Below the pieces are notes generated by a model that saw nothing but the letters and a program-made list of their open reading frames with translations, did no database searches and was not told where the DNA came from. A stretch of DNA of 63,487 nucleotides, the filler included, from Octopus bimaculoides (lineage: Eukaryota): NCBI RefSeq assembly GCF_001194135.2. It is 8 parts of 7 records of this genome, joined end to end, with 100 filler letters (N's around TTAATTAATTAA, not from the genome) between each part and the next. Parts side by side here need not be neighbours in the genome. Positions count along the whole stretch, not along the records: positions 1 to 6,136 come from NC_069009.1; 7 more parts are not named here. The stretch is one strand, 5' to 3'. This document shows positions 1-6,180 of the stretch, piece by piece. A program made the translations under genes and the position numbers. The stretch's first letter is position 1, and every line of letters starts with the position of its first letter.

Positions 1-327
1 TCCTCATCGACATCATTATCTTAAACATCACCCCCACAAACACCATCATCATCACTATCATCATCATCTTCATCATCATCACTACCACCACCTAGCATCC
101 TGATCAACTTGAACACTAAGTTAAAATCGTCCTCGCCCTCCAAATTATCATGCCATCACCACCATCACAAACATCACCACCAACATCACGACAACCAATG
201 CCATCATCATCATCATCATCTACTCCGTCGTCATCACCGTATACTTTCCTAATTTTTTTTGCATTATATTTTTTATATACATTACGAACCTGTATACGTT
301 TGTTCACGATGCACTTTTTTGTTACAG

Positions 328-399
328 AGAGTTGTCTAGAAATGCAATAGATGAATTAGAAGTTGGATCTTTTCAAAATCTTCCCAATTTAACGACTCT
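328..399 (+). CDS. LRR coding exon A (72 bp, phase 2-2): (L)ELSRNAIDELEVGSFQNLPNLTT(L)
   Basis: Acceptor tttttgttacAG at 326-327, donor GTAAGT at 400. Exactly 72 nt. Translation fits the extracellular LRR consensus LxLxxNxIxxLxxxxFxxLxxLxxL. Confidence 0.92.
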
Positions 400-1881
400 G
401 TAAGTTGCATTAGTTTTTTGATTCTCTTTTTTTCATAATATAATTCTAAACATTACCAACATCAGCCCCATCAGAAGCATTATAATACCTTCGTCATCAA
501 AACTCTCACAATATTTTCGTCTCCTCTGCCTCATCATCATATTCATCACTGCTTCAACACCTACCGAACATTATCAACATTATCATGAAGTTCATCATGA
601 NNNNNNNNNNNNNNNNNNNNNNNNNNNNNNNNNNNNNNNNNNNNNNNNNNNNNNNNNNNNNNNNNNNNNNNNNNNNNNNNNNNNNNNNNNNNNNNNNNNN
701 NNNNNNNNNNNNNNNNNNNNNNNNNNNNNNNNNNNNNNNNNNNNNNNNNNNNNNNNNNNNNNNNNNNNNNNNNNNNNNNNNNNNNNNNNNNNNNNNNNNN
801 NNNNNNNNNNNNNNNNNNNNNNNNNNNNNNNNNNNNNNNNNNNNNNNNNNNNNNNNNNNNNNNNNNNNNNNNNNNNNNNNNNNNNNNNNNNNNNNNNNNN
901 NNNNNNNNNNNNNNNNNNNNNNNNNNNNNNNNNNNNNNNNNNNNNNNNNNNNNNNNNNNNNNNNNNNNNNNNNNNNNNNNNNNNNNNNNNNNNNNNNNNN
1001 NNNNNNNNNNNNNNNNNNNNNNNNNNNNNNNNNNNNNNNNNNNNNNNNNNNNNNNNNNNNNNNNNNNNNNNNNNNNNNNNNNNNNNNNNNNNNNNNNNNN
1101 NNNNNNNNNNNNNNNNNNNNNNNNNNNNNNNNNNNNNNNNNNNNNNNNNNNNNNNNNNNNNNNNNNNNNNNNNNNNNNNNNNNNNNNNNNNNNNNNNNNN
1201 NNNNNNNNNNNNNNNNNNNNNNNNNNNNNNNNNNNNNNNNNNNNNNNNNNNNNNNNNNNNNNNNNNNNNNNNNNNNATCCTACATCTTTTTTTCTTGTTA
1301 TTGCTTTTATTCTTCTTTTTTATCTTCTTCTACTTCGTCTACCTTTTCTTCTCGGCCTCTAAAATTCCACCCCGCCAAGACACCCTTACCATAACTTAGG
1401 TCTTCATCCTTGTCTTCATTAACATCCCCATTCTCGTCATTCTTCTTCTTCTTCTACGTCGTCTTCTTCTTCCTCCTCTACTTTTCTACTTCTACATGTT
1501 TTTCTTCATCTTTGCCTGATTCTTCTTTATTAAATCCTTTTTTCTACTTATGCTTCTTCCACCTCCGATTCATCTTTTTCTTCTTCATCTTTTTCTTCTT
1601 CTTTTACACATACACAATCTGCAACGCCATCATCATCATCAATATCATATCCTTCATTGCAACAAAACCTGCAAATTTTTACAAAGAACAAAATTACGAA
1701 TATCACCTTATCATCAGCATCATAACAGCATACTCATCACTGCTCCATCCTACTCAACATTATCAACAACATCATCATGAATTTCATCATGATGTTAATT
1801 TACTTTTCATCTCTTCCATCATCCAATTCTTTGCGCACAAATGTGTTCAATAAATGTTCTTATCTCAATGTTATGTTCCAG

Positions 1882-1953
1882 ACATTTGCACAGTAATAAA
1901 ATTATGAAAATCAAAACAGAGACCTTCCGAAATCTTTCCACTTTAACAAATCT
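1882..1953 (+). CDS. LRR coding exon B (72 bp, phase 2-2): (L)HLHSNKIMKIKTETFRNLSTLTN(L)
   Basis: Acceptor ttatgttccAG at 1880-1881, donor GTAAGT at 1954. 72 nt, LRR consensus, same phase as exon A. Confidence 0.92.
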
Positions 1954-3641
1954 GTAAGTTGAATCAACCTACGTTTATAGTATTTCTTTGGCGATATCTT
2001 TCTAAACCTGTAATGTCTTTGTATAGATGCAATTTATAGTTTTGGAATGTAAGTGAATGTGAGTGTGAGCTCATTTGTGAGATGTGAGATATATGGGAAC
2101 GTGAAAGTTGCGGCGAAACATTTACTTCATGCATGTGTATATCTCTCTGTATGGATGAATTGCTGTGAGTGTATATGGGTATATTACATACGGTGTTTAA
2201 GTGAAGATCGGAGCTAAATAACATCCTTGAATAACACTTGTAGAATTATTTGTCGCAATAGATGATACATACGCTTAATTTTTTAAAATGTACTTTAACG
2301 GTTGTTGTTGTTTTTGTCGATCTTATTGTTGTTGTTGCTATTCTCCTTCACCTTCTTCTTCTTCTTCTTCTTCTTCTTCTTTTTCTTCTTTTTCACCTCC
2401 ACTTATTCTTTACCTCCATATAATTCTACATCTTTTTCTCCTTCTCTCCTGTATGTACTTCTAGCTCTTCCTCTTCTCCAGCTATTTCTTCTCCATCTTT
2501 TTCTTCTACTTCTTCCTATCCTCCTCCTCTTTCTTCTTCTTCTCCTTGTTGTTGTTGTTGTTCATCTTCTTTTTCTCCTACTTCTTCTTCATCATTCTTT
2601 TCTACATATTTTTCAACATCTTTTTCCCTGCTTGTAGTTCTATCCCATTTTTTCTCCTTTTNNNNNNNNNNNNNNNNNNNNNNNNNNNNNNNNNNNNNNN
2701 NNNNNNNNNNNNNNNNNNNNNNNNNNNNNNNNNNNNNNNNNNNNNNNNNNNNNNNNNNNNNNNNNNNNNNNNNNNNNNNNNNNNNNNNNNNNNNNNNNNN
2801 NNNNNNNNNNNNNNNNNNNNNNNNNNNNNNNNNNNNNNNNNNNNNNNNNNNNNNNNNNNNNNNNNNNNNNNNNNNNNNNNNNNNNNNNNNNNNNNNNNNN
2901 NNNNNNNNNNNNNNNNNNNNNNNNNNNNNNNNNNNNNNNNNNNNNNNNNNNNNNNNNNNNNNNNNNNNNNNNNNNNNNNNNNNNNNNNNNNNNNNNNNNN
3001 NNNNNNNNNNNNNNNNNNNNNNNNNNNNNNNNNNNNNNNNNNNNNNNNNNNNNNNNNNNNNNNNNNNNNNNNNNNNNNNNNNNNNNNNNNNNNNNNNNNN
3101 NNNNNNNNNNNNNNNNNNNNNNNCATATATAAATATCTCTAACCTTCCAACTCTTAATCATTCACTTTATTTCTTTGAAAATATTTCCAGCTACATAACT
3201 TCTTCACTATCACCATCGTCAAAATCATCATTGCCATAATTTCTCACATCAACATCATTATCATAAACACCACTACCACAAACACCATCATCATCTACAT
3301 CACCATCATCACCACCACCACCACCACCACCACAATCAGCATCATCATCAACATGAACATTAACACCAACATCCTCGTACTCCGAATTATCATCATATCC
3401 ATCACTAACATAACAAACATTGCAAACTAACACCACGACAATCACCACCACCACCACCACCAGCATCTGCATCCTCATCATCATCATCATCATCATAATC
3501 ATCATTATCATTACTGTCATCATCATCATCATCATCTACACCGCCATCTTCAGCGTTTACTTTCCTAAATGTTTAAGCATTATATTTTATATTTCATTAC
3601 GAACCTCTACACATTTTTTCACGGCTCACTTTTTGTTACAG

Positions 3642-3713
3642 AAATTTGTTTTATAATGTCATCAATGAAATAGAAGTTGGATCTTTTCAAAATCTCCACA
3701 GTTTAATGACCCT
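3642..3713 (+). CDS. LRR coding exon A' (72 bp): (L)NLFYNVINEIEVGSFQNLHSLMT(L)
   Basis: Acceptor tttttgttacAG at 3640-3641, donor GTAAGT at 3714. Paralogue of exon A, including its flanking intron sequence. Confidence 0.92.
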
Positions 3714-3896
3714 GTAAGTTGCATTAGTTTTTTTATTCTCTTTTATTGACAATATAATTCTAAACATTCAATGTCTTTCTATGCTTGCTTTTTTTCTCTG
3801 AAACTCCTTGACACACTATATACACTCAGTCGTTTTCCACAGGAATATGCAATTCTTTGTGAATATCTGAGGTGTGTGGAGACGTGTGTGTGCGTA

Positions 3897-3941
<45 letters not shown>

Positions 3942-4774
3942 ATAGCAGTGTCTGTGTTTATGTATGAGTGTCTGATAATTAATGTATATGATTCTGTGTA
4001 TATATGTACATAAGTCTGTCTTTCAGTATGAGTGAACGTACATGAGTGAAAGATTTCACTTGTATATCCTTTTGTATATTATTTTTTATGTTTACTTCTC
4101 GATCAACGCTGATTACCATTCATGGCTCTCCGTTCTAATTGTTTATTGTGAATTACATTCTTTATTTTTAAATTTTGCAACACCTTCCATGTCAGAGTAA
4201 TTTATTTTACGCTTTTCTANNNNNNNNNNNNNNNNNNNNNNNNNNNNNNNNNNNNNNNNNNNNNNNNNNNNNNNNNNNNNNNNNNNNNNNNNNNNNNNNN
4301 NNNNNNNNNNNNNNNNNNNNNNNNNNNNNNNNNNNNNNNNNNNNNNNNNNNNNNNNNNNNNNNNNNNNNNNNNNNNNNNNNNNNNNNNNNNNNNNNNNNN
4401 NNNNNNNNNNNNNNNNNNNNNNNNNNNNNNNNNNNNNNNNNNNNNNNNNNNNNNNNNNNNNNNNNNNNNNNNNNNNNNNNNNNNNNNNNNNNNNNNNNNN
4501 NNNNNNNNNNNNNNNNNNNNNNNNNNNNNNNNNNNNNNNNNNNNNNNNNNNNNNNNNNNNNNNNNNNNNNNNNNNNNNNNNNNNNNNNNNNNNNNNNNNN
4601 NNNNNNNNNNNNNNNNNNNNNNNNNNNNNNNNNNNNNNNNNNNNNNNNNNNNNNNNNNNNNNNNNNNNNNNNNNNNNNNNNNNNNNNNNNNNNNNNNNNN
4701 NNNNNNNNNNNNNNNNNNNNNNNNNNNNNNNNNNNNNNNNNNNNNNNNNNNNNNNNNNNNNNNNNAAAGACGCA

Positions 4775-5340
4775 TTAGAGTAGAACCACTCAGACGGGCC
4801 AGTTTCGCTACATTCCCACACCTTTCAGCAAATGTAATGGGGGCGGGGCATCGCTTCTTTCTCTGGCCTCATATTCTTTCCAAGTGAAATCTTCAGTAAT
4901 AGATTTATCAGTTCGACCTCGATAACGCCCAGAACCCCTCTAAGTACGTCATCGTAATTTTCCACCAGTAAATCTCTACGGAATTTGAAGTGTTGATACC
5001 CCACTGACCGATTTTTCCCACCAGCGAGTTCTTGGCAACATTCCAGATGTCAGTCACTCTGTCTAGGTTTCTTCCTGACCTCGGAGATGAGTTGGGAAAT
5101 TGCATGTTTGACAAACGGCGACTACAGATGTTCTCCGTTTAGGCAGAATATCTGGAGATATTGCATCCTCAGCGCATGTGTACGCATCATTAGCCACGGT
5201 GCGCCCATCCCTTCACATAGTGTGCTGGCAGCAGATGGACACCTCACCAAACGTACCTGTCCACAAAAATGTGAAGAGGAGGCGCTCCGACTTGGTGAGG
5301 TGTCAACGGACCACAATCTTCAAAACTGTCATGTTCATCA
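4775..5340 (-). mobile_element. Degenerate L1/Tx1-like non-LTR retrotransposon fragment (C-terminal part of ORF2)
   Basis: Minus-strand peptides across frameshifts (ERLLFTFLWTG..SICCQH, GMGAPWLMMRTHALRMQYL, GEHL*SPFVK) resemble the post-RT region of Tx1-like ORF2. Multiple stops. Confidence 0.55.
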
Positions 5341-5680
5341 CCAACAGAGAACAACACCACCAACATCAACATCAATATCATGTTCACCATCACAATAAAA
5401 CTTCTATTCACCATCATTATCAGAATAATCAACATTAACAACATCAGTCCCATCATCAGCATCATAACACCTTCGTCATCACAACTCTGACAATATTTTC
5501 TGCTCGTCTGCTTCATCATCATATTTATCAGTTTCCACACCTATCCGCCGTCATGAATCTCATCATGAGTGTAATCTACTTTTCATATCTTCTATCATCC
5601 AATTATTTAGACATAATATTAAATATTCTCTCACACATTTGTTCCATTATTGTTCTTTGTAACTCAATTTTATGTTGCAG

Positions 5681-5752
5681 GAATTTGGGTTTAAACGAAA
5701 TCAAAGAAATCAAAGCCGAACACTTCCAAAATCTGTCCAGTTTAACAAATCT
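5681..5752 (+). CDS. LRR coding exon B' (72 bp): (L)NLGLNEIKEIKAEHFQNLSSLTN(L)
   Basis: Acceptor ttttatgttgcAG at 5679-5680, donor GTAAGT at 5753. Paralogue of exon B, including its flanking intron sequence. Confidence 0.92.
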
Positions 5753-6180
5753 GTAAGTTGTATCAATCCTATTTTATATTATTTCGTTGACGATATCTTT
5801 ATAATTCTGTAATATCTTCCCGTACACATATTTAAGCTCCCACAATCGTCTTTCTATACTTGCGTTTTATTGTTCATGAAATTCTGTGAATGTGAGTGTG
5901 GGCCCATTTCTAAGATATTGGATGTATAAGAGCGTGTTACTTGAGGGTAAGAATTTAGTGCATGCTTGTGTATGCGGGCGTATTAACATCTGTGCACATT
6001 ACGCATGGTCTTTACTTCTACATAGAAACTAAGTAACATCCTTAGATAATCTTTGTAATCGCATCTTTAACCTCAGATGATTCATACGTTAATATATACT
6101 CATTTCTTGTTGTTGTTGCTTGTCCTCTTGTATACTNNNNNNNNNNNNNNNNNNNNNNNNNNNNNNNNNNNNNNNNNNNN

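What the first reader, a model, noticed from the sequence alone, without database searches (positions are those of the whole stretch)
328..5752. Hidden modular LRR exon array with a hypervariable ligand face (A-B-A'-B' cassette duplication)
Seen: four 72-bp phase-2 symmetric exons, each encoding one 24-aa LRR, duplicated as a two-exon unit with the introns still alignable. The beta-strand motif xLxxN differs in all four (ELSRN, HLHSN, NLFYN, NLGLN), while the convex half (F[Q/R]NLxxL[T/M]xL) is conserved. A vs A' differ at 16 of 72 nt and 9 aa; B vs B' differ at 10 aa. By eye, the exons are no more conserved than the adjacent intron. Established: xxLxLxx positions form the concave ligand-binding face in VLR, TLR, plant LRR and LGR ectodomains; 72-bp phase-2 LRR exons occur in LGR/RXFP/GRL101-type GPCRs and Slit-like genes; symmetric exons can be skipped in frame. 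Inference: a receptor diversifying its binding surface by exon-cassette duplication and diversifying selection, possibly with combinatorial splicing (an immune or chemosensory candidate).
Basis: partly seen in the sequence, partly recalled or inferred. Interest (0 to 1): 0.78.

Follow-up and report, generated by a model that had tools for sequence, protein, structure and literature searches.

The report
Octopus one-repeat-per-exon LRR receptor array
The window holds four real 72-base exons, each coding one leucine-rich repeat, from a large octopus receptor-gene family linked to adhesion GPCRs; the layout is a known kind, and selection for a hypervariable binding face is not shown.

Summary
Four 72-nt exons (328-399, 1882-1953, 3642-3713, 5681-5752, + strand) have AG/GTAAGT splice sites. 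Each codes one 24-residue LRR and starts and ends in the same codon phase. All three assembly gaps lie in introns.

A profile of exon plus splice flanks, built only from annotated octopus genes, hits the window at exactly these four places (E 1e-17 to 3e-24). Those genes are LRR arrays of the Octopus-restricted "adhesion GPCR G6-like" family (LRR, GAIN/GPS, 7tm_2). That family has already been published as an octopus-specific expansion. An LGR/GRL101-type receptor is therefore unlikely.

Only part of the cassette claim survives:
- A and A' are mutual nearest neighbours.
- B and B' are not nearest neighbours at exon level.
- The two internal introns are not colinear.
- The block ending at gap 1 carries the upstream module of a B-type exon, so a fifth exon is probably hidden in that gap.

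Selection results:
- Scaffold residues are under purifying selection (p=0.009).
- Concave-face x codons differ at 11 of 12 positions, but dN/dS does not exceed 1.
- Ten control duplicate pairs and a site-wise count give about 0.7-1.0.

So diversifying selection is unproven, and combinatorial splicing cannot be tested here. I file this as a new member of a known kind, of modest interest.

The parts
328..399 (+). LRR exon A (E-type), 72 nt, phase-2 symmetric; peptide ELSRNAIDELEVGSFQNLPNLTT plus a split Leu codon
   Evidence: nhmmer E=1.4e-17. Acceptor ttttttgttacag, donor gtaagttg.
433..600 (+). Intron segment downstream of A that is really the 'upstream module' of a B-type exon. It ends in the motif CATGAAGTTCATCATGA (584-600) at the edge of gap 1.
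   Evidence: 79% identical to 5414-5568 (upstream of B') and 76% to 1699-1792 (upstream of B). In the window the motif otherwise occurs only 90 nt before B and 113 nt before B'.
601..1276 (+). Assembly gap 1 in an intron. A further B-type 72-nt LRR exon is predicted to start about 90-115 nt into it. This is an inference.
   Evidence: The estimated gap length of 676 nt has room for the rest of the upstream module, the exon and a downstream module.
1882..1953 (+). LRR exon B (K-type), 72 nt; peptide HLHSNKIMKIKTETFRNLSTLTN
   Evidence: E=2.6e-21. Nearest exons are L002_8201, L002_12447 and L002_76535 at 18 nt differences, against 22 to B'.
2662..3123 (+). Assembly gap 2, inside the B->A' intron. 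(CTT)n lies on its left and a (CAT)n-rich stretch on its right, the same order as the uninterrupted 1277-1800.
   Evidence: Nothing suggests an exon here.
3642..3713 (+). LRR exon A' (E-type), 72 nt; peptide NLFYNVINEIEVGSFQNLHSLMT. True duplicate partner of A.
   Evidence: E=1.7e-17. A and A' are mutual nearest neighbours: 16 nt differences, flanks 84% and 78% identical.
4220..4765 (+). Assembly gap 3, inside the A'->B' intron
   Evidence: The flanks say nothing about its content.
4766..5340 (.). GC-richer unique block (GC about 0.45) in the A'->B' intron, with no counterpart in the A-side intron. Probably an unclassified insertion.
   Evidence: No Pfam, tRNA or Rfam hit. Absent from L001-L004.
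5681..5752 (+). LRR exon B' (K-type), 72 nt; peptide NLGLNEIKEIKAEHFQNLSSLTN
   Evidence: E=2.6e-24. Nearest exons are L002_2012 and L002_20351 at 15 nt differences.
208..327 (+). Conserved upstream intron flank of A, paired with 3521-3641 upstream of A'
   Evidence: 82-84% identity.
1690..1881 (+). Conserved upstream intron flank of B, paired with 5480-5680 upstream of B'
   Evidence: The proximal 100-120 nt are 82% identical.
1954..2320 (+). Downstream intron module of B, alignable with 5753-6136 downstream of B'
   Evidence: Identity is 80-84% in the first 50-100 nt and 67% over about 350 nt.

Best explanation
The window is a stretch of the ectodomain-coding exon array of an octopus-lineage LRR gene. 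It belongs to the family whose LRR arrays are joined to GAIN/GPS/7tm_2 adhesion-GPCR modules. That family is the 'adhesion GPCR G6-like' cluster, published as octopus-specific expansion group 3.

Shown:
- Each 24-residue 'typical' LRR is one 72-nt exon flanked by phase-2 introns.
- The split codon is CT|N, which gives Leu whatever base the next exon supplies.
- Any exon unit can therefore be duplicated, lost or skipped without breaking the frame or the hydrophobic core.

Inferred:
- The array grew by tandem duplication of exon-plus-intron units. This was probably unequal crossing-over, helped by the (CAT)n/(CTT)n low-complexity intron DNA.
- A and A' are one such recent pair.
- B, B' and a probable third B-type exon hidden in gap 1 are older or more tangled relatives.

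After duplication, selection kept the solenoid scaffold (L, N, I, F positions). The solvent-exposed x positions of the concave strand and ascending loop changed at about the neutral rate. This is why the exons look no better conserved than their intron flanks. Those flanks are themselves probably constrained, because short exons in multi-kilobase introns need strong splice signals.

Whether this gene ends in a 7TM module cannot be seen in 6 kb. By analogy, the protein would be a cell-surface LRR recognition or adhesion module.
For: Exon anatomy and translation. LRR_8 E=4.7e-21. AF2 solenoid with pLDDT 96, strands straddling the exon junctions. Generic extracellular LRR fold (Nogo receptor, NGL, VLR, LGR5, Slit2), TM about 0.92.

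Family assignment:
- Best protein matches are four Octopus LRR proteins at 49-54% identity.
- In O. sinensis (L001) and O. bimaculoides (L002), every LRR of these proteins is also a 72-nt exon with the same stereotyped flanks.
- A profile built from those exons alone finds exactly the window's four.

Link to adhesion GPCRs:
- The C-terminal parts of these LRR proteins are up to 97-99% identical to proteins of the GAIN/GPS set (P0078 to P0178; P0154 to P0211).
- P0190 combines LRRNT, LRR_8 and 7tm_2.
- A 1088-aa O. sinensis product has LRR_8, GPS and 7tm_2.
- In L003 an LRR array lies 4.6 kb upstream of a GPS+7tm_2 gene on the same strand.
- All 48 homologues of the GAIN/GPS part are from Octopus.
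- Ritschard et al. 2019 (PMC6408891) describe this expansion, with LRRs in 5 of 22 members.

Multi-exon super-repeats occur in L002. The split codon is CT in 25 of 30 exons.

Selection:
- Scaffold and convex sites: nonsynonymous 9/80 against synonymous 8/22, p=0.009.
- Family-wide site counts: scaffold 0.05-0.3, x positions about 1.0.
- Control pairs: pN/pS 0.58-0.67.
Against: - No LRRNT, LRRCT, GAIN, GPS or 7TM exon is in the window, so the link to an adhesion GPCR is by family resemblance only.
- Many family gene models are LRR-only.
- The margin of the octopus proteins over unrelated LRR proteins is modest at protein level (91 against 80 bits). The stronger argument is the DNA-level exon-unit profile.
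- No database protein contains these exact exons, so expression is unproven.
- In this window the concave x codons are changed at 11 of 12 positions. Their nonsynonymous divergence (0.54-0.59) is 2-3 times the intron divergence. Plain neutral drift does not fully predict that.
Confidence: 0.68

Rival explanations
1. One reading: a receptor whose concave binding face is being actively diversified by cassette duplication plus positive selection, with the symmetric exons used combinatorially (skipped or mutually exclusive) to give a repertoire for immune or chemosensory recognition.
For: - In the two window pairs, 11 of 12 concave or ascending-loop x codons differ against 8 of 34 others (p=5e-5).
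- Nonsynonymous divergence there (0.54 and 0.59) exceeds alignable intron divergence (0.17 and 0.31; binomial p=0.0015 and 0.033).
- The first 36 nt of the exons are 58-69% identical, against 78-84% for the proximal flanks.
- Every exon is symmetric with a CT|N junction, so any combination stays in frame.
- Ritschard et al. report positive selection on some members of the expansion and expression in suckers, skin and axial nerve cord.
- Precedent exists in brown-algal ROCO LRR exons.
Against: - dN/dS does not exceed 1 against exonic synonymous change: 0.72 and 0.37 overall. The concave set against exon synonymous sites gives p=0.26 and 1.0.
- Splice-proximal intron is a poor neutral yardstick.
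- In 10 control duplicate pairs from related loci, the first exon half is more conserved than the flanks (85% against 77-81%, p=0.005). Concave pN/pS there is 0.67.
- A site-wise count over 30 exons gives no site significantly above 1.
- B and B' may not be corresponding exons. That would inflate their divergence.
- There are no transcript data.
Confidence: 0.17
2. The exons belong to a rhodopsin-class LRR receptor (LGR/RXFP/GRL101 type) or to a Slit-like gene, as the reader suggested on the basis of the exon size and phase.
For: - The best solved-structure sequence matches are LGR5 and LGR4 ectodomains (E=2.8e-34 summed over repeats).
- 72-nt phase-2 LRR exons are known from gonadotropin-receptor and Slit genes.
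Against: - The PDB ranking is not specific. IGFALS, TLR3, LRIG1, LRRC15 and Nogo receptor follow closely.
- The DNA-level exon-unit profile, including intron flanks, ties the window to octopus arrays whose partners carry GPS and 7tm_2, not 7tm_1.
- The names 'Slit homolog' and 'SLITRK4-like' on relatives are automatic labels on LRR-only fragments whose C-termini match the adhesion-GPCR family.
Confidence: 0.03
3. The array is a non-expressed or decaying by-product of local segmental duplication (pseudo-exons), and its fast change simply reflects loss of constraint.
For: - No protein in a 5.8-billion-sequence collection contains these exons.
- The exons are no more conserved than their introns.
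- Overall dN/dS is fairly high (0.37-0.72).
- The assembly here is poor.
Against: - All four exons keep an open frame, perfect AG/GTAAGT sites and every scaffold residue.
- Scaffold and convex codons show significantly fewer nonsynonymous than synonymous changes since duplication (p=0.009).
- The same dN/dS level is seen in annotated family members.
Confidence: 0.12

Closest known systems
Octopus-specific adhesion-GPCR expansion ('group 3' of Ritschard et al. 2019, PMC6408891; RefSeq 'adhesion G-protein coupled receptor G6-like', with LRR parts annotated separately as LRRC15-like, TLR5, Slit homolog 1-like or SLITRK4-like)
   Same: Same 24-residue LRR consensus. Same 72-nt phase-2 exon per repeat. 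Same stereotyped splice flanks (aactcaattttatgttacag | gtaagttg). Same multi-exon super-repeats and the same CAT-rich intron DNA. DNA identity of exon plus flanks is 75-81%.
   Different: The window's exons are in no annotated protein. No cap, GAIN, GPS or 7TM exon is visible in the 6 kb. A and A' form a subtype of their own, 25-31 nt from any L002 exon.
Brown-algal ROCO LRR exon arrays (Zambounis et al. 2012; Teng et al. 2024, PMC11378527)
   Same: One LRR per 72-bp phase-2 exon, intense tandem exon duplication or shuffling, and variable residues on the concave face. Alternative splicing was proposed there as a source of diversity.
   Different: Unrelated lineage and an intracellular LRR-ROC-COR protein. 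Positive selection at four concave sites was shown there by PAML; here it is not shown. This is a case of 'works like', not membership.
Vertebrate LGR / glycoprotein-hormone receptor and Slit genes
   Same: LRR ectodomain built from similar-sized in-phase (phase 2) single-repeat exons, thought to have arisen by exon duplication. LGR5 and LGR4 are the top solved-structure sequence matches.
   Different: Those are single conserved genes with fixed repeat numbers. They end in 7tm_1 (LGR) or EGF/LamG (Slit) modules. The window's relatives end in GAIN/GPS/7tm_2 and form a lineage-specific cluster.
Vertebrate ADGRA2/ADGRA3 (GPR124/GPR125), LRR-bearing adhesion GPCRs
   Same: N-terminal LRR domain followed by GAIN and 7tm_2. 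The Pfam GAIN_ADGRA3 model hits the octopus relatives.
   Different: ADGRA proteins have only a few LRRs plus Ig and HormR domains and are not expanded. Orthology was not tested.

Membership tests
Octopus LRR / adhesion-GPCR 'G6-like' expansion | 24-residue typical LRRs, each on a 72-nt phase-2 exon with the family's stereotyped acceptor and donor flanks | tested here: met
   An nhmmer profile built only from L001 and L002 exon units hits the four window exons at E 1.7e-17 to 2.6e-24 and nothing else.
Octopus LRR / adhesion-GPCR 'G6-like' expansion | Closest protein relatives are members of the family | tested here: met
   The top four BLASTP hits are Octopus P0078, P0151, P0154 and P0152 (49-54% identity, 83-91 bits). 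The next, unrelated LRR protein scores 80 bits, so the margin is modest.
Octopus LRR / adhesion-GPCR 'G6-like' expansion | GAIN/GPS and 7tm_2 modules downstream in the same gene | not testable with these tools
   The window ends 384 nt after exon B'. Relatives show the link, but many gene models are LRR-only.
Octopus LRR / adhesion-GPCR 'G6-like' expansion | LRRNT and LRRCT-like cysteine caps around the array | not testable with these tools
   None lies in the readable 4.4 kb. Exon scans on both strands found only the four internal repeats.
LGR / RXFP / GRL101-type rhodopsin-class LRR GPCRs | LRR ectodomain of single-repeat, in-phase exons | tested here: met
   The feature is shared with several unrelated families, so it does not discriminate.
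LGR / RXFP / GRL101-type rhodopsin-class LRR GPCRs | 7tm_1 transmembrane domain (with or without LDLa modules) in the same gene | not testable with these tools
   Not in the window. Relatives that share the exon unit carry 7tm_2 and GPS instead, which argues against membership.
Diversifying LRR recognition repertoires (VLR-like or ROCO-like logic) | dN/dS above 1 at concave-face x positions | tested here: inconclusive
   Window pairs: concave pN/pS is 1.7 for A/A' (8 nonsynonymous against 1 synonymous change) and 0.79 for B/B'. Neither is significant against synonymous sites, though both are significant against intron divergence. Controls give 0.67. Site-wise values are about 1.0-1.3, with no site significant.
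Diversifying LRR recognition repertoires (VLR-like or ROCO-like logic) | Combinatorial use of the repeat units (alternative splicing or somatic assembly) | not testable with these tools
   No transcript data. The geometry allows it: symmetric exons with a CT|N junction.
Two-exon cassette duplication (A-B to A'-B') | Both exon pairs are mutual nearest relatives, and the internal intron is colinear between the copies | tested here: not met
   A and A' are mutual nearest neighbours. B and B' are not: 22 nt apart, against 15-18 nt to L002 exons. The sequence downstream of A (433-600) matches the region upstream of B', and the rest of the two introns does not align.

The most novel reading that the evidence does not exclude
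The octopus LRR/adhesion-GPCR loci, this array included, might be a germline-encoded combinatorial recognition system. It would consist of dozens of interchangeable 72-nt exons with a frame-proof and Leu-proof CT|N junction. These would be spliced in varying combinations in sucker, skin and arm-nerve-cord cells, with the concave face under diversifying selection. That would be a Dscam-like or ROCO-like logic for chemotactile or self/non-self recognition, alongside the protocadherin expansion.
Probability: 0.1. Interest if true: 0.8.

Novelty: new member of a known kind. Interest (0 to 1): 0.3.

Why it matters
The window adds unannotated exons to a gene family that is one of the few octopus-specific receptor expansions. 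The family is reported to be expressed in suckers, skin and the axial nerve cord.

The analysis also shows why automatic annotation breaks these genes into pieces with misleading names such as TLR5, Slit and SLITRK. The exons are 72 nt long, sit in multi-kilobase repeat-rich introns, and can be exchanged without breaking the frame.

The exon geometry (phase-2 symmetric, CT|N junction, strand split across exons) makes duplication and skipping harmless. The family is therefore a sensible place to look for splice-generated receptor diversity in cephalopods. Nothing in this window shows that such diversity exists.

Tried and rejected
1. A word-indexed protein search with the spliced 96-aa peptide found nothing. 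The exhaustive phmmer search was dominated by giant multi-repeat proteins. It only became useful once hits were filtered by identity.
2. I tried to assign B and B' to the K2 and K1 exon subtypes of the three-exon super-repeat in L002. The distances are too close to support it: 18-19 against 21-27, and 15-20 against 17-21. I dropped this as evidence.
3. I looked for the window itself or an orthologue in four fetched octopus loci (L001-L004). Only paralogous matches at 85% identity or less turned up. Two further loci gave no DNA because the gene ranges are too long, and one protein was not on record.
4. The GC-rich block 4766-5340 has no Pfam domain in any long ORF, no tRNA-like head, no Rfam hit, no terminal repeats and no copies in L001-L004. 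It stays unclassified.
5. ORFs outside the four exons are translations of (CAT)n/(CTT)n low-complexity DNA or run through gaps. I rejected them as genes.
6. Structure comparison does not discriminate between LRR families.

Full report
**1. What is in the sequence**

The readable part of the window is four blocks: 1-600, 1277-2661, 3124-4219 and 4766-6136. Three gaps separate them.

Each block holds one 72-nt exon on the + strand: A 328-399, B 1882-1953, A' 3642-3713 and B' 5681-5752. Each follows a pyrimidine tract plus AG and is followed by GTAAGTTG. Each is open only in the frame 1 nt + 23 codons + 2 nt; the other two frames carry stops.

Spliced in order, the exons give ELSRNAIDELEVGSFQNLPNLTTL HLHSNKIMKIKTETFRNLSTLTNL NLFYNVINEIEVGSFQNLHSLMTL NLGLNEIKEIKAEHFQNLSSLTN. 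This matches Pfam LRR_8 at E=4.7e-21.

AlphaFold2 folds it as a confident LRR solenoid (pLDDT 96, pTM 0.87). The strands lie at residues 23-25, 47-49 and 71-73, so each straddles an exon junction. Structure search returns generic extracellular LRR proteins at TM about 0.92: Nogo receptor, NGL, VLR, LGR5 and Slit2.

A/A' differ at 16 nt and 9 aa; B/B' differ at 22 nt and 10 aa. No further exon-like unit exists on either strand of the readable sequence. Other ORFs are low-complexity or gap artefacts. There are no Rfam or tRNA hits.

**2. The gaps**

Every exon lies whole inside one block, and all three gaps fall in introns. Frame continuity therefore depends on splicing phase, not on gap length. 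All four exons share a strand, which fits the scaffold's orientation.

Adjacency is another matter.
- The first 47 nt downstream of A match the region downstream of A' (92% over the first 50 nt).
- From about 433 to the gap edge at 600, the sequence matches the region upstream of B-type exons instead. It is 79% identical to 5414-5568 (upstream of B') and 76% to 1699-1792 (upstream of B).
- The motif CATGAAnnTCATCATGA occurs on the + strand three times in the window: at 584 (the block's last bases), 90 nt before B, and 113 nt before B'.
- Related pieces of this module in L002 also precede LRR exon units.

I infer, with about two-thirds confidence, that a fifth B-type exon lies roughly 90-115 nt into gap 1. 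The estimated 676 nt would accommodate it. Gap 2 sits between (CTT)n and (CAT)n tracts, the same order seen uninterrupted in 1277-1800. Neither gap 2 nor gap 3 gives any hint of an exon.

**3. What family it is**

A word-indexed search with the spliced peptide found nothing, so no catalogued protein contains these exons. An exhaustive phmmer search gave thousands of LRR proteins. The most identical was Octopus sinensis XP_036369864.1, 'LRRC15-like'.

Searching from that protein brought in other Octopus LRR proteins. Their automatic names are TLR5 (O. bimaculoides), Slit homolog 1-like and SLITRK4-like. These are the window's four best BLASTP matches, at 49-54% identity. The margin over unrelated LRR proteins is modest.

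The DNA evidence is stronger.
- In the O. sinensis contig L001 and the O. bimaculoides chromosomal locus L002, every LRR of these proteins is a separate 72-nt exon. Introns are 0.7-6 kb, and the flanks are the same stereotyped sequences.
- The window's exons plus flanks align to many of these units at 75-81% identity.
- An nhmmer profile built only from the L001 and L002 units recovers exactly the four window exons, at E 1.7e-17 to 2.6e-24.

**4. The link to adhesion GPCRs**

- The non-LRR C-terminal parts of these proteins are up to 97-99% identical to Octopus proteins of the GAIN/GPS set. P0078 matches P0178 at 99%, and P0154 matches the 'adhesion GPCR G6-like' protein P0211 at 97%.
- Members of that set carry GPS, GAIN_ADGRA3 and 7tm_2 domains.
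- P0190 combines LRRNT, LRR_8 and 7tm_2.
- A 1088-aa O. sinensis product has LRR_8, GPS and 7tm_2.
- In L003, a four-unit LRR array lies 4.6 kb upstream of a GPS+7tm_2 gene on the same strand. In L004, LRR arrays are nested in an 82-kb GPS/7tm_2 gene model.
- All 48 homologues of the GAIN/GPS part at E<=1e-20 are from Octopus.

This is the octopus-specific adhesion-GPCR expansion of Ritschard et al. 2019 (PMC6408891). [quoted passage not shown]

The window itself cannot show a 7TM module of any class.

**5. The cassette claim**

A and A' are a clear pair. They are mutual nearest neighbours among 30 exons (16 nt apart, against 23 nt or more to any other exon). Their flanks are 84% and 78% identical.

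B and B' are both K-type units, and their proximal flanks are 82% and 84% identical. At exon level, however, each is closer to exons of L002 (15-18 nt) than to the other (22 nt).

Beyond the exon-proximal modules, the A->B and A'->B' introns are not colinear. The A' side carries about 1.65 kb that the A side lacks, including gap 3 and a GC-richer block at 4766-5340.

Multi-exon super-repeats of three or four exons are obvious in L002. Cassette-wise growth is thus a family habit. The window's true order is more likely A-[hidden]-B-A'-B' than a clean two-exon duplication.

**6. The selection claim**

Overall NG86 dN/dS is 0.72 for A/A' and 0.37 for B/B'.

I split the codons a priori into concave or ascending-loop x positions (LRR positions 5, 7, 8, 10, 12 and 13) and the rest.
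- x codons differ at 11 of 12 positions, against 8 of 34 for the rest (p=5e-5).
- Nonsynonymous divergence at the x positions is 0.54 and 0.59.
- The remaining codons show purifying selection: nonsynonymous 9/80 against synonymous 8/22, p=0.009. This argues that these are working coding exons.

The concave rate exceeds alignable intron divergence (0.17 and 0.31; p=0.0015 and 0.033). It does not exceed exonic synonymous divergence (p=0.26 and 1.0). Splice-proximal intron is probably constrained, so it is a weak neutral yardstick.

Two controls speak against a general diversifying regime.
- In ten duplicate exon pairs from L001 and L002, the first exon half is more conserved than the flanks (85% against 77-81%, p=0.005). 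pN/pS is 0.67 at concave sites and 0.58 elsewhere.
- A rough parsimony (SLAC-like) count over 30 exons gives scaffold sites 0.05-0.3 and x sites about 1.0-1.3. No site is significantly above 1.

The pattern is a constrained scaffold with x positions that look free to change, which is what LRR arrays generally show. 'Hypervariable under diversifying selection' is not established. The excess in this window's two pairs is suggestive at most, and B/B' may not be corresponding exons.

**7. How it most likely works**

Shown:
- The exon units are modular.
- The split codon is CT|N in 25 of 30 family exons, with A or G as the next base in 29 of 30. Any junction therefore restores Leu, or another hydrophobic residue, at LRR position 4.

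Inferred:
- Arrays grow and shrink by unequal crossing-over between the similar exon-plus-intron units. Strand-asymmetric (CAT)n/(CTT)n intron DNA may favour this.
- The product is the LRR recognition or adhesion part of a cell-surface protein, probably an adhesion GPCR.

Exon skipping would stay in frame. Whether it happens is unknown.

**8. Comparison with what is known, and verdict**

One-LRR-per-72-bp phase-2 exons with duplication or shuffling are already described. Examples are gonadotropin-receptor and LGR genes, Slit genes, human NLRs, and most similarly brown-algal ROCO genes. In the ROCO genes, concave-site positive selection and alternative splicing were reported. The octopus expansion itself is published.

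The finding is a real, unannotated member of a known kind. The receptor class is probably wrong. The cassette structure is oversimplified. The selection and splicing ideas remain untested hypotheses. Interest is modest.

Noticed in passing
window exons, nt 62-64 of each (389-391, 1943-1945, 3703-3705, 5742-5744); also all L001 and L002 LRR exons: The Leu at LRR position 1 is coded by TTA in 30 of 30 family exons, with no synonymous change at all. Other Leu positions use several codons. This may be an exonic splicing signal 9-11 nt from the donor.
   Followed up: partly
window 4766-5340: A GC-richer block (about 0.45 against about 0.33 around it) in the A'->B' intron, with no counterpart on the A side. 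It has no Pfam, tRNA or Rfam hit, no terminal repeats and no copy in L001-L004. Probably an unclassified insertion.
   Followed up: partly
window 1-230, 1600-1800, 3190-3560, 5340-5540 ((CAT)n-rich); 1277-1600 and 2281-2661 ((CTT)n-rich); L001 4200-4760: Strongly strand-asymmetric low-complexity intron DNA (GC skew down to -0.8). (CAT)n-type tracts lie upstream of the exons and (CTT)n tracts further upstream. L001 has a 30-nt CAT-rich minisatellite in the same position relative to an exon.
   Followed up: partly
window 3884-3938: A (GT)27 microsatellite in the intron downstream of A'.
   Followed up: no
window 584-600, 1776-1792, 5552-5568: The near-palindromic motif CATGAAnnTCATCATGA is specific in this window to the region about 90-115 nt upstream of B-type exons. 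It is not found in L002 at up to 3 mismatches.
   Followed up: partly
L003 1-22609; L004 10001-91698; L002 1-82390: Octopus LRR arrays are annotated piecemeal under misleading automatic names (TLR5, Slit homolog 1-like, SLITRK4-like, LRRC15-like). They lie directly upstream of, or nested within, GPS/7tm_2 gene models on the same strand. This suggests systematically fragmented gene models.
   Followed up: partly
proteins P0152, P0153, P0154, P0151 (relatives, not in the window): Between the LRR cap and the SEA-like region lies a Cys-rich module ending CC.GNLCN. By eye it resembles a Ly6/uPAR three-finger domain. No Pfam hit at E<=0.01 in P0152.
   Followed up: no
AF2 model of the spliced 96-aa peptide: The beta-strands (residues 23-25, 47-49, 71-73) straddle the exon junctions. 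Each concave-face strand is therefore built from the end of one exon, the split Leu codon and the start of the next. The binding face of one repeat is not contained in a single exon.
   Followed up: yes
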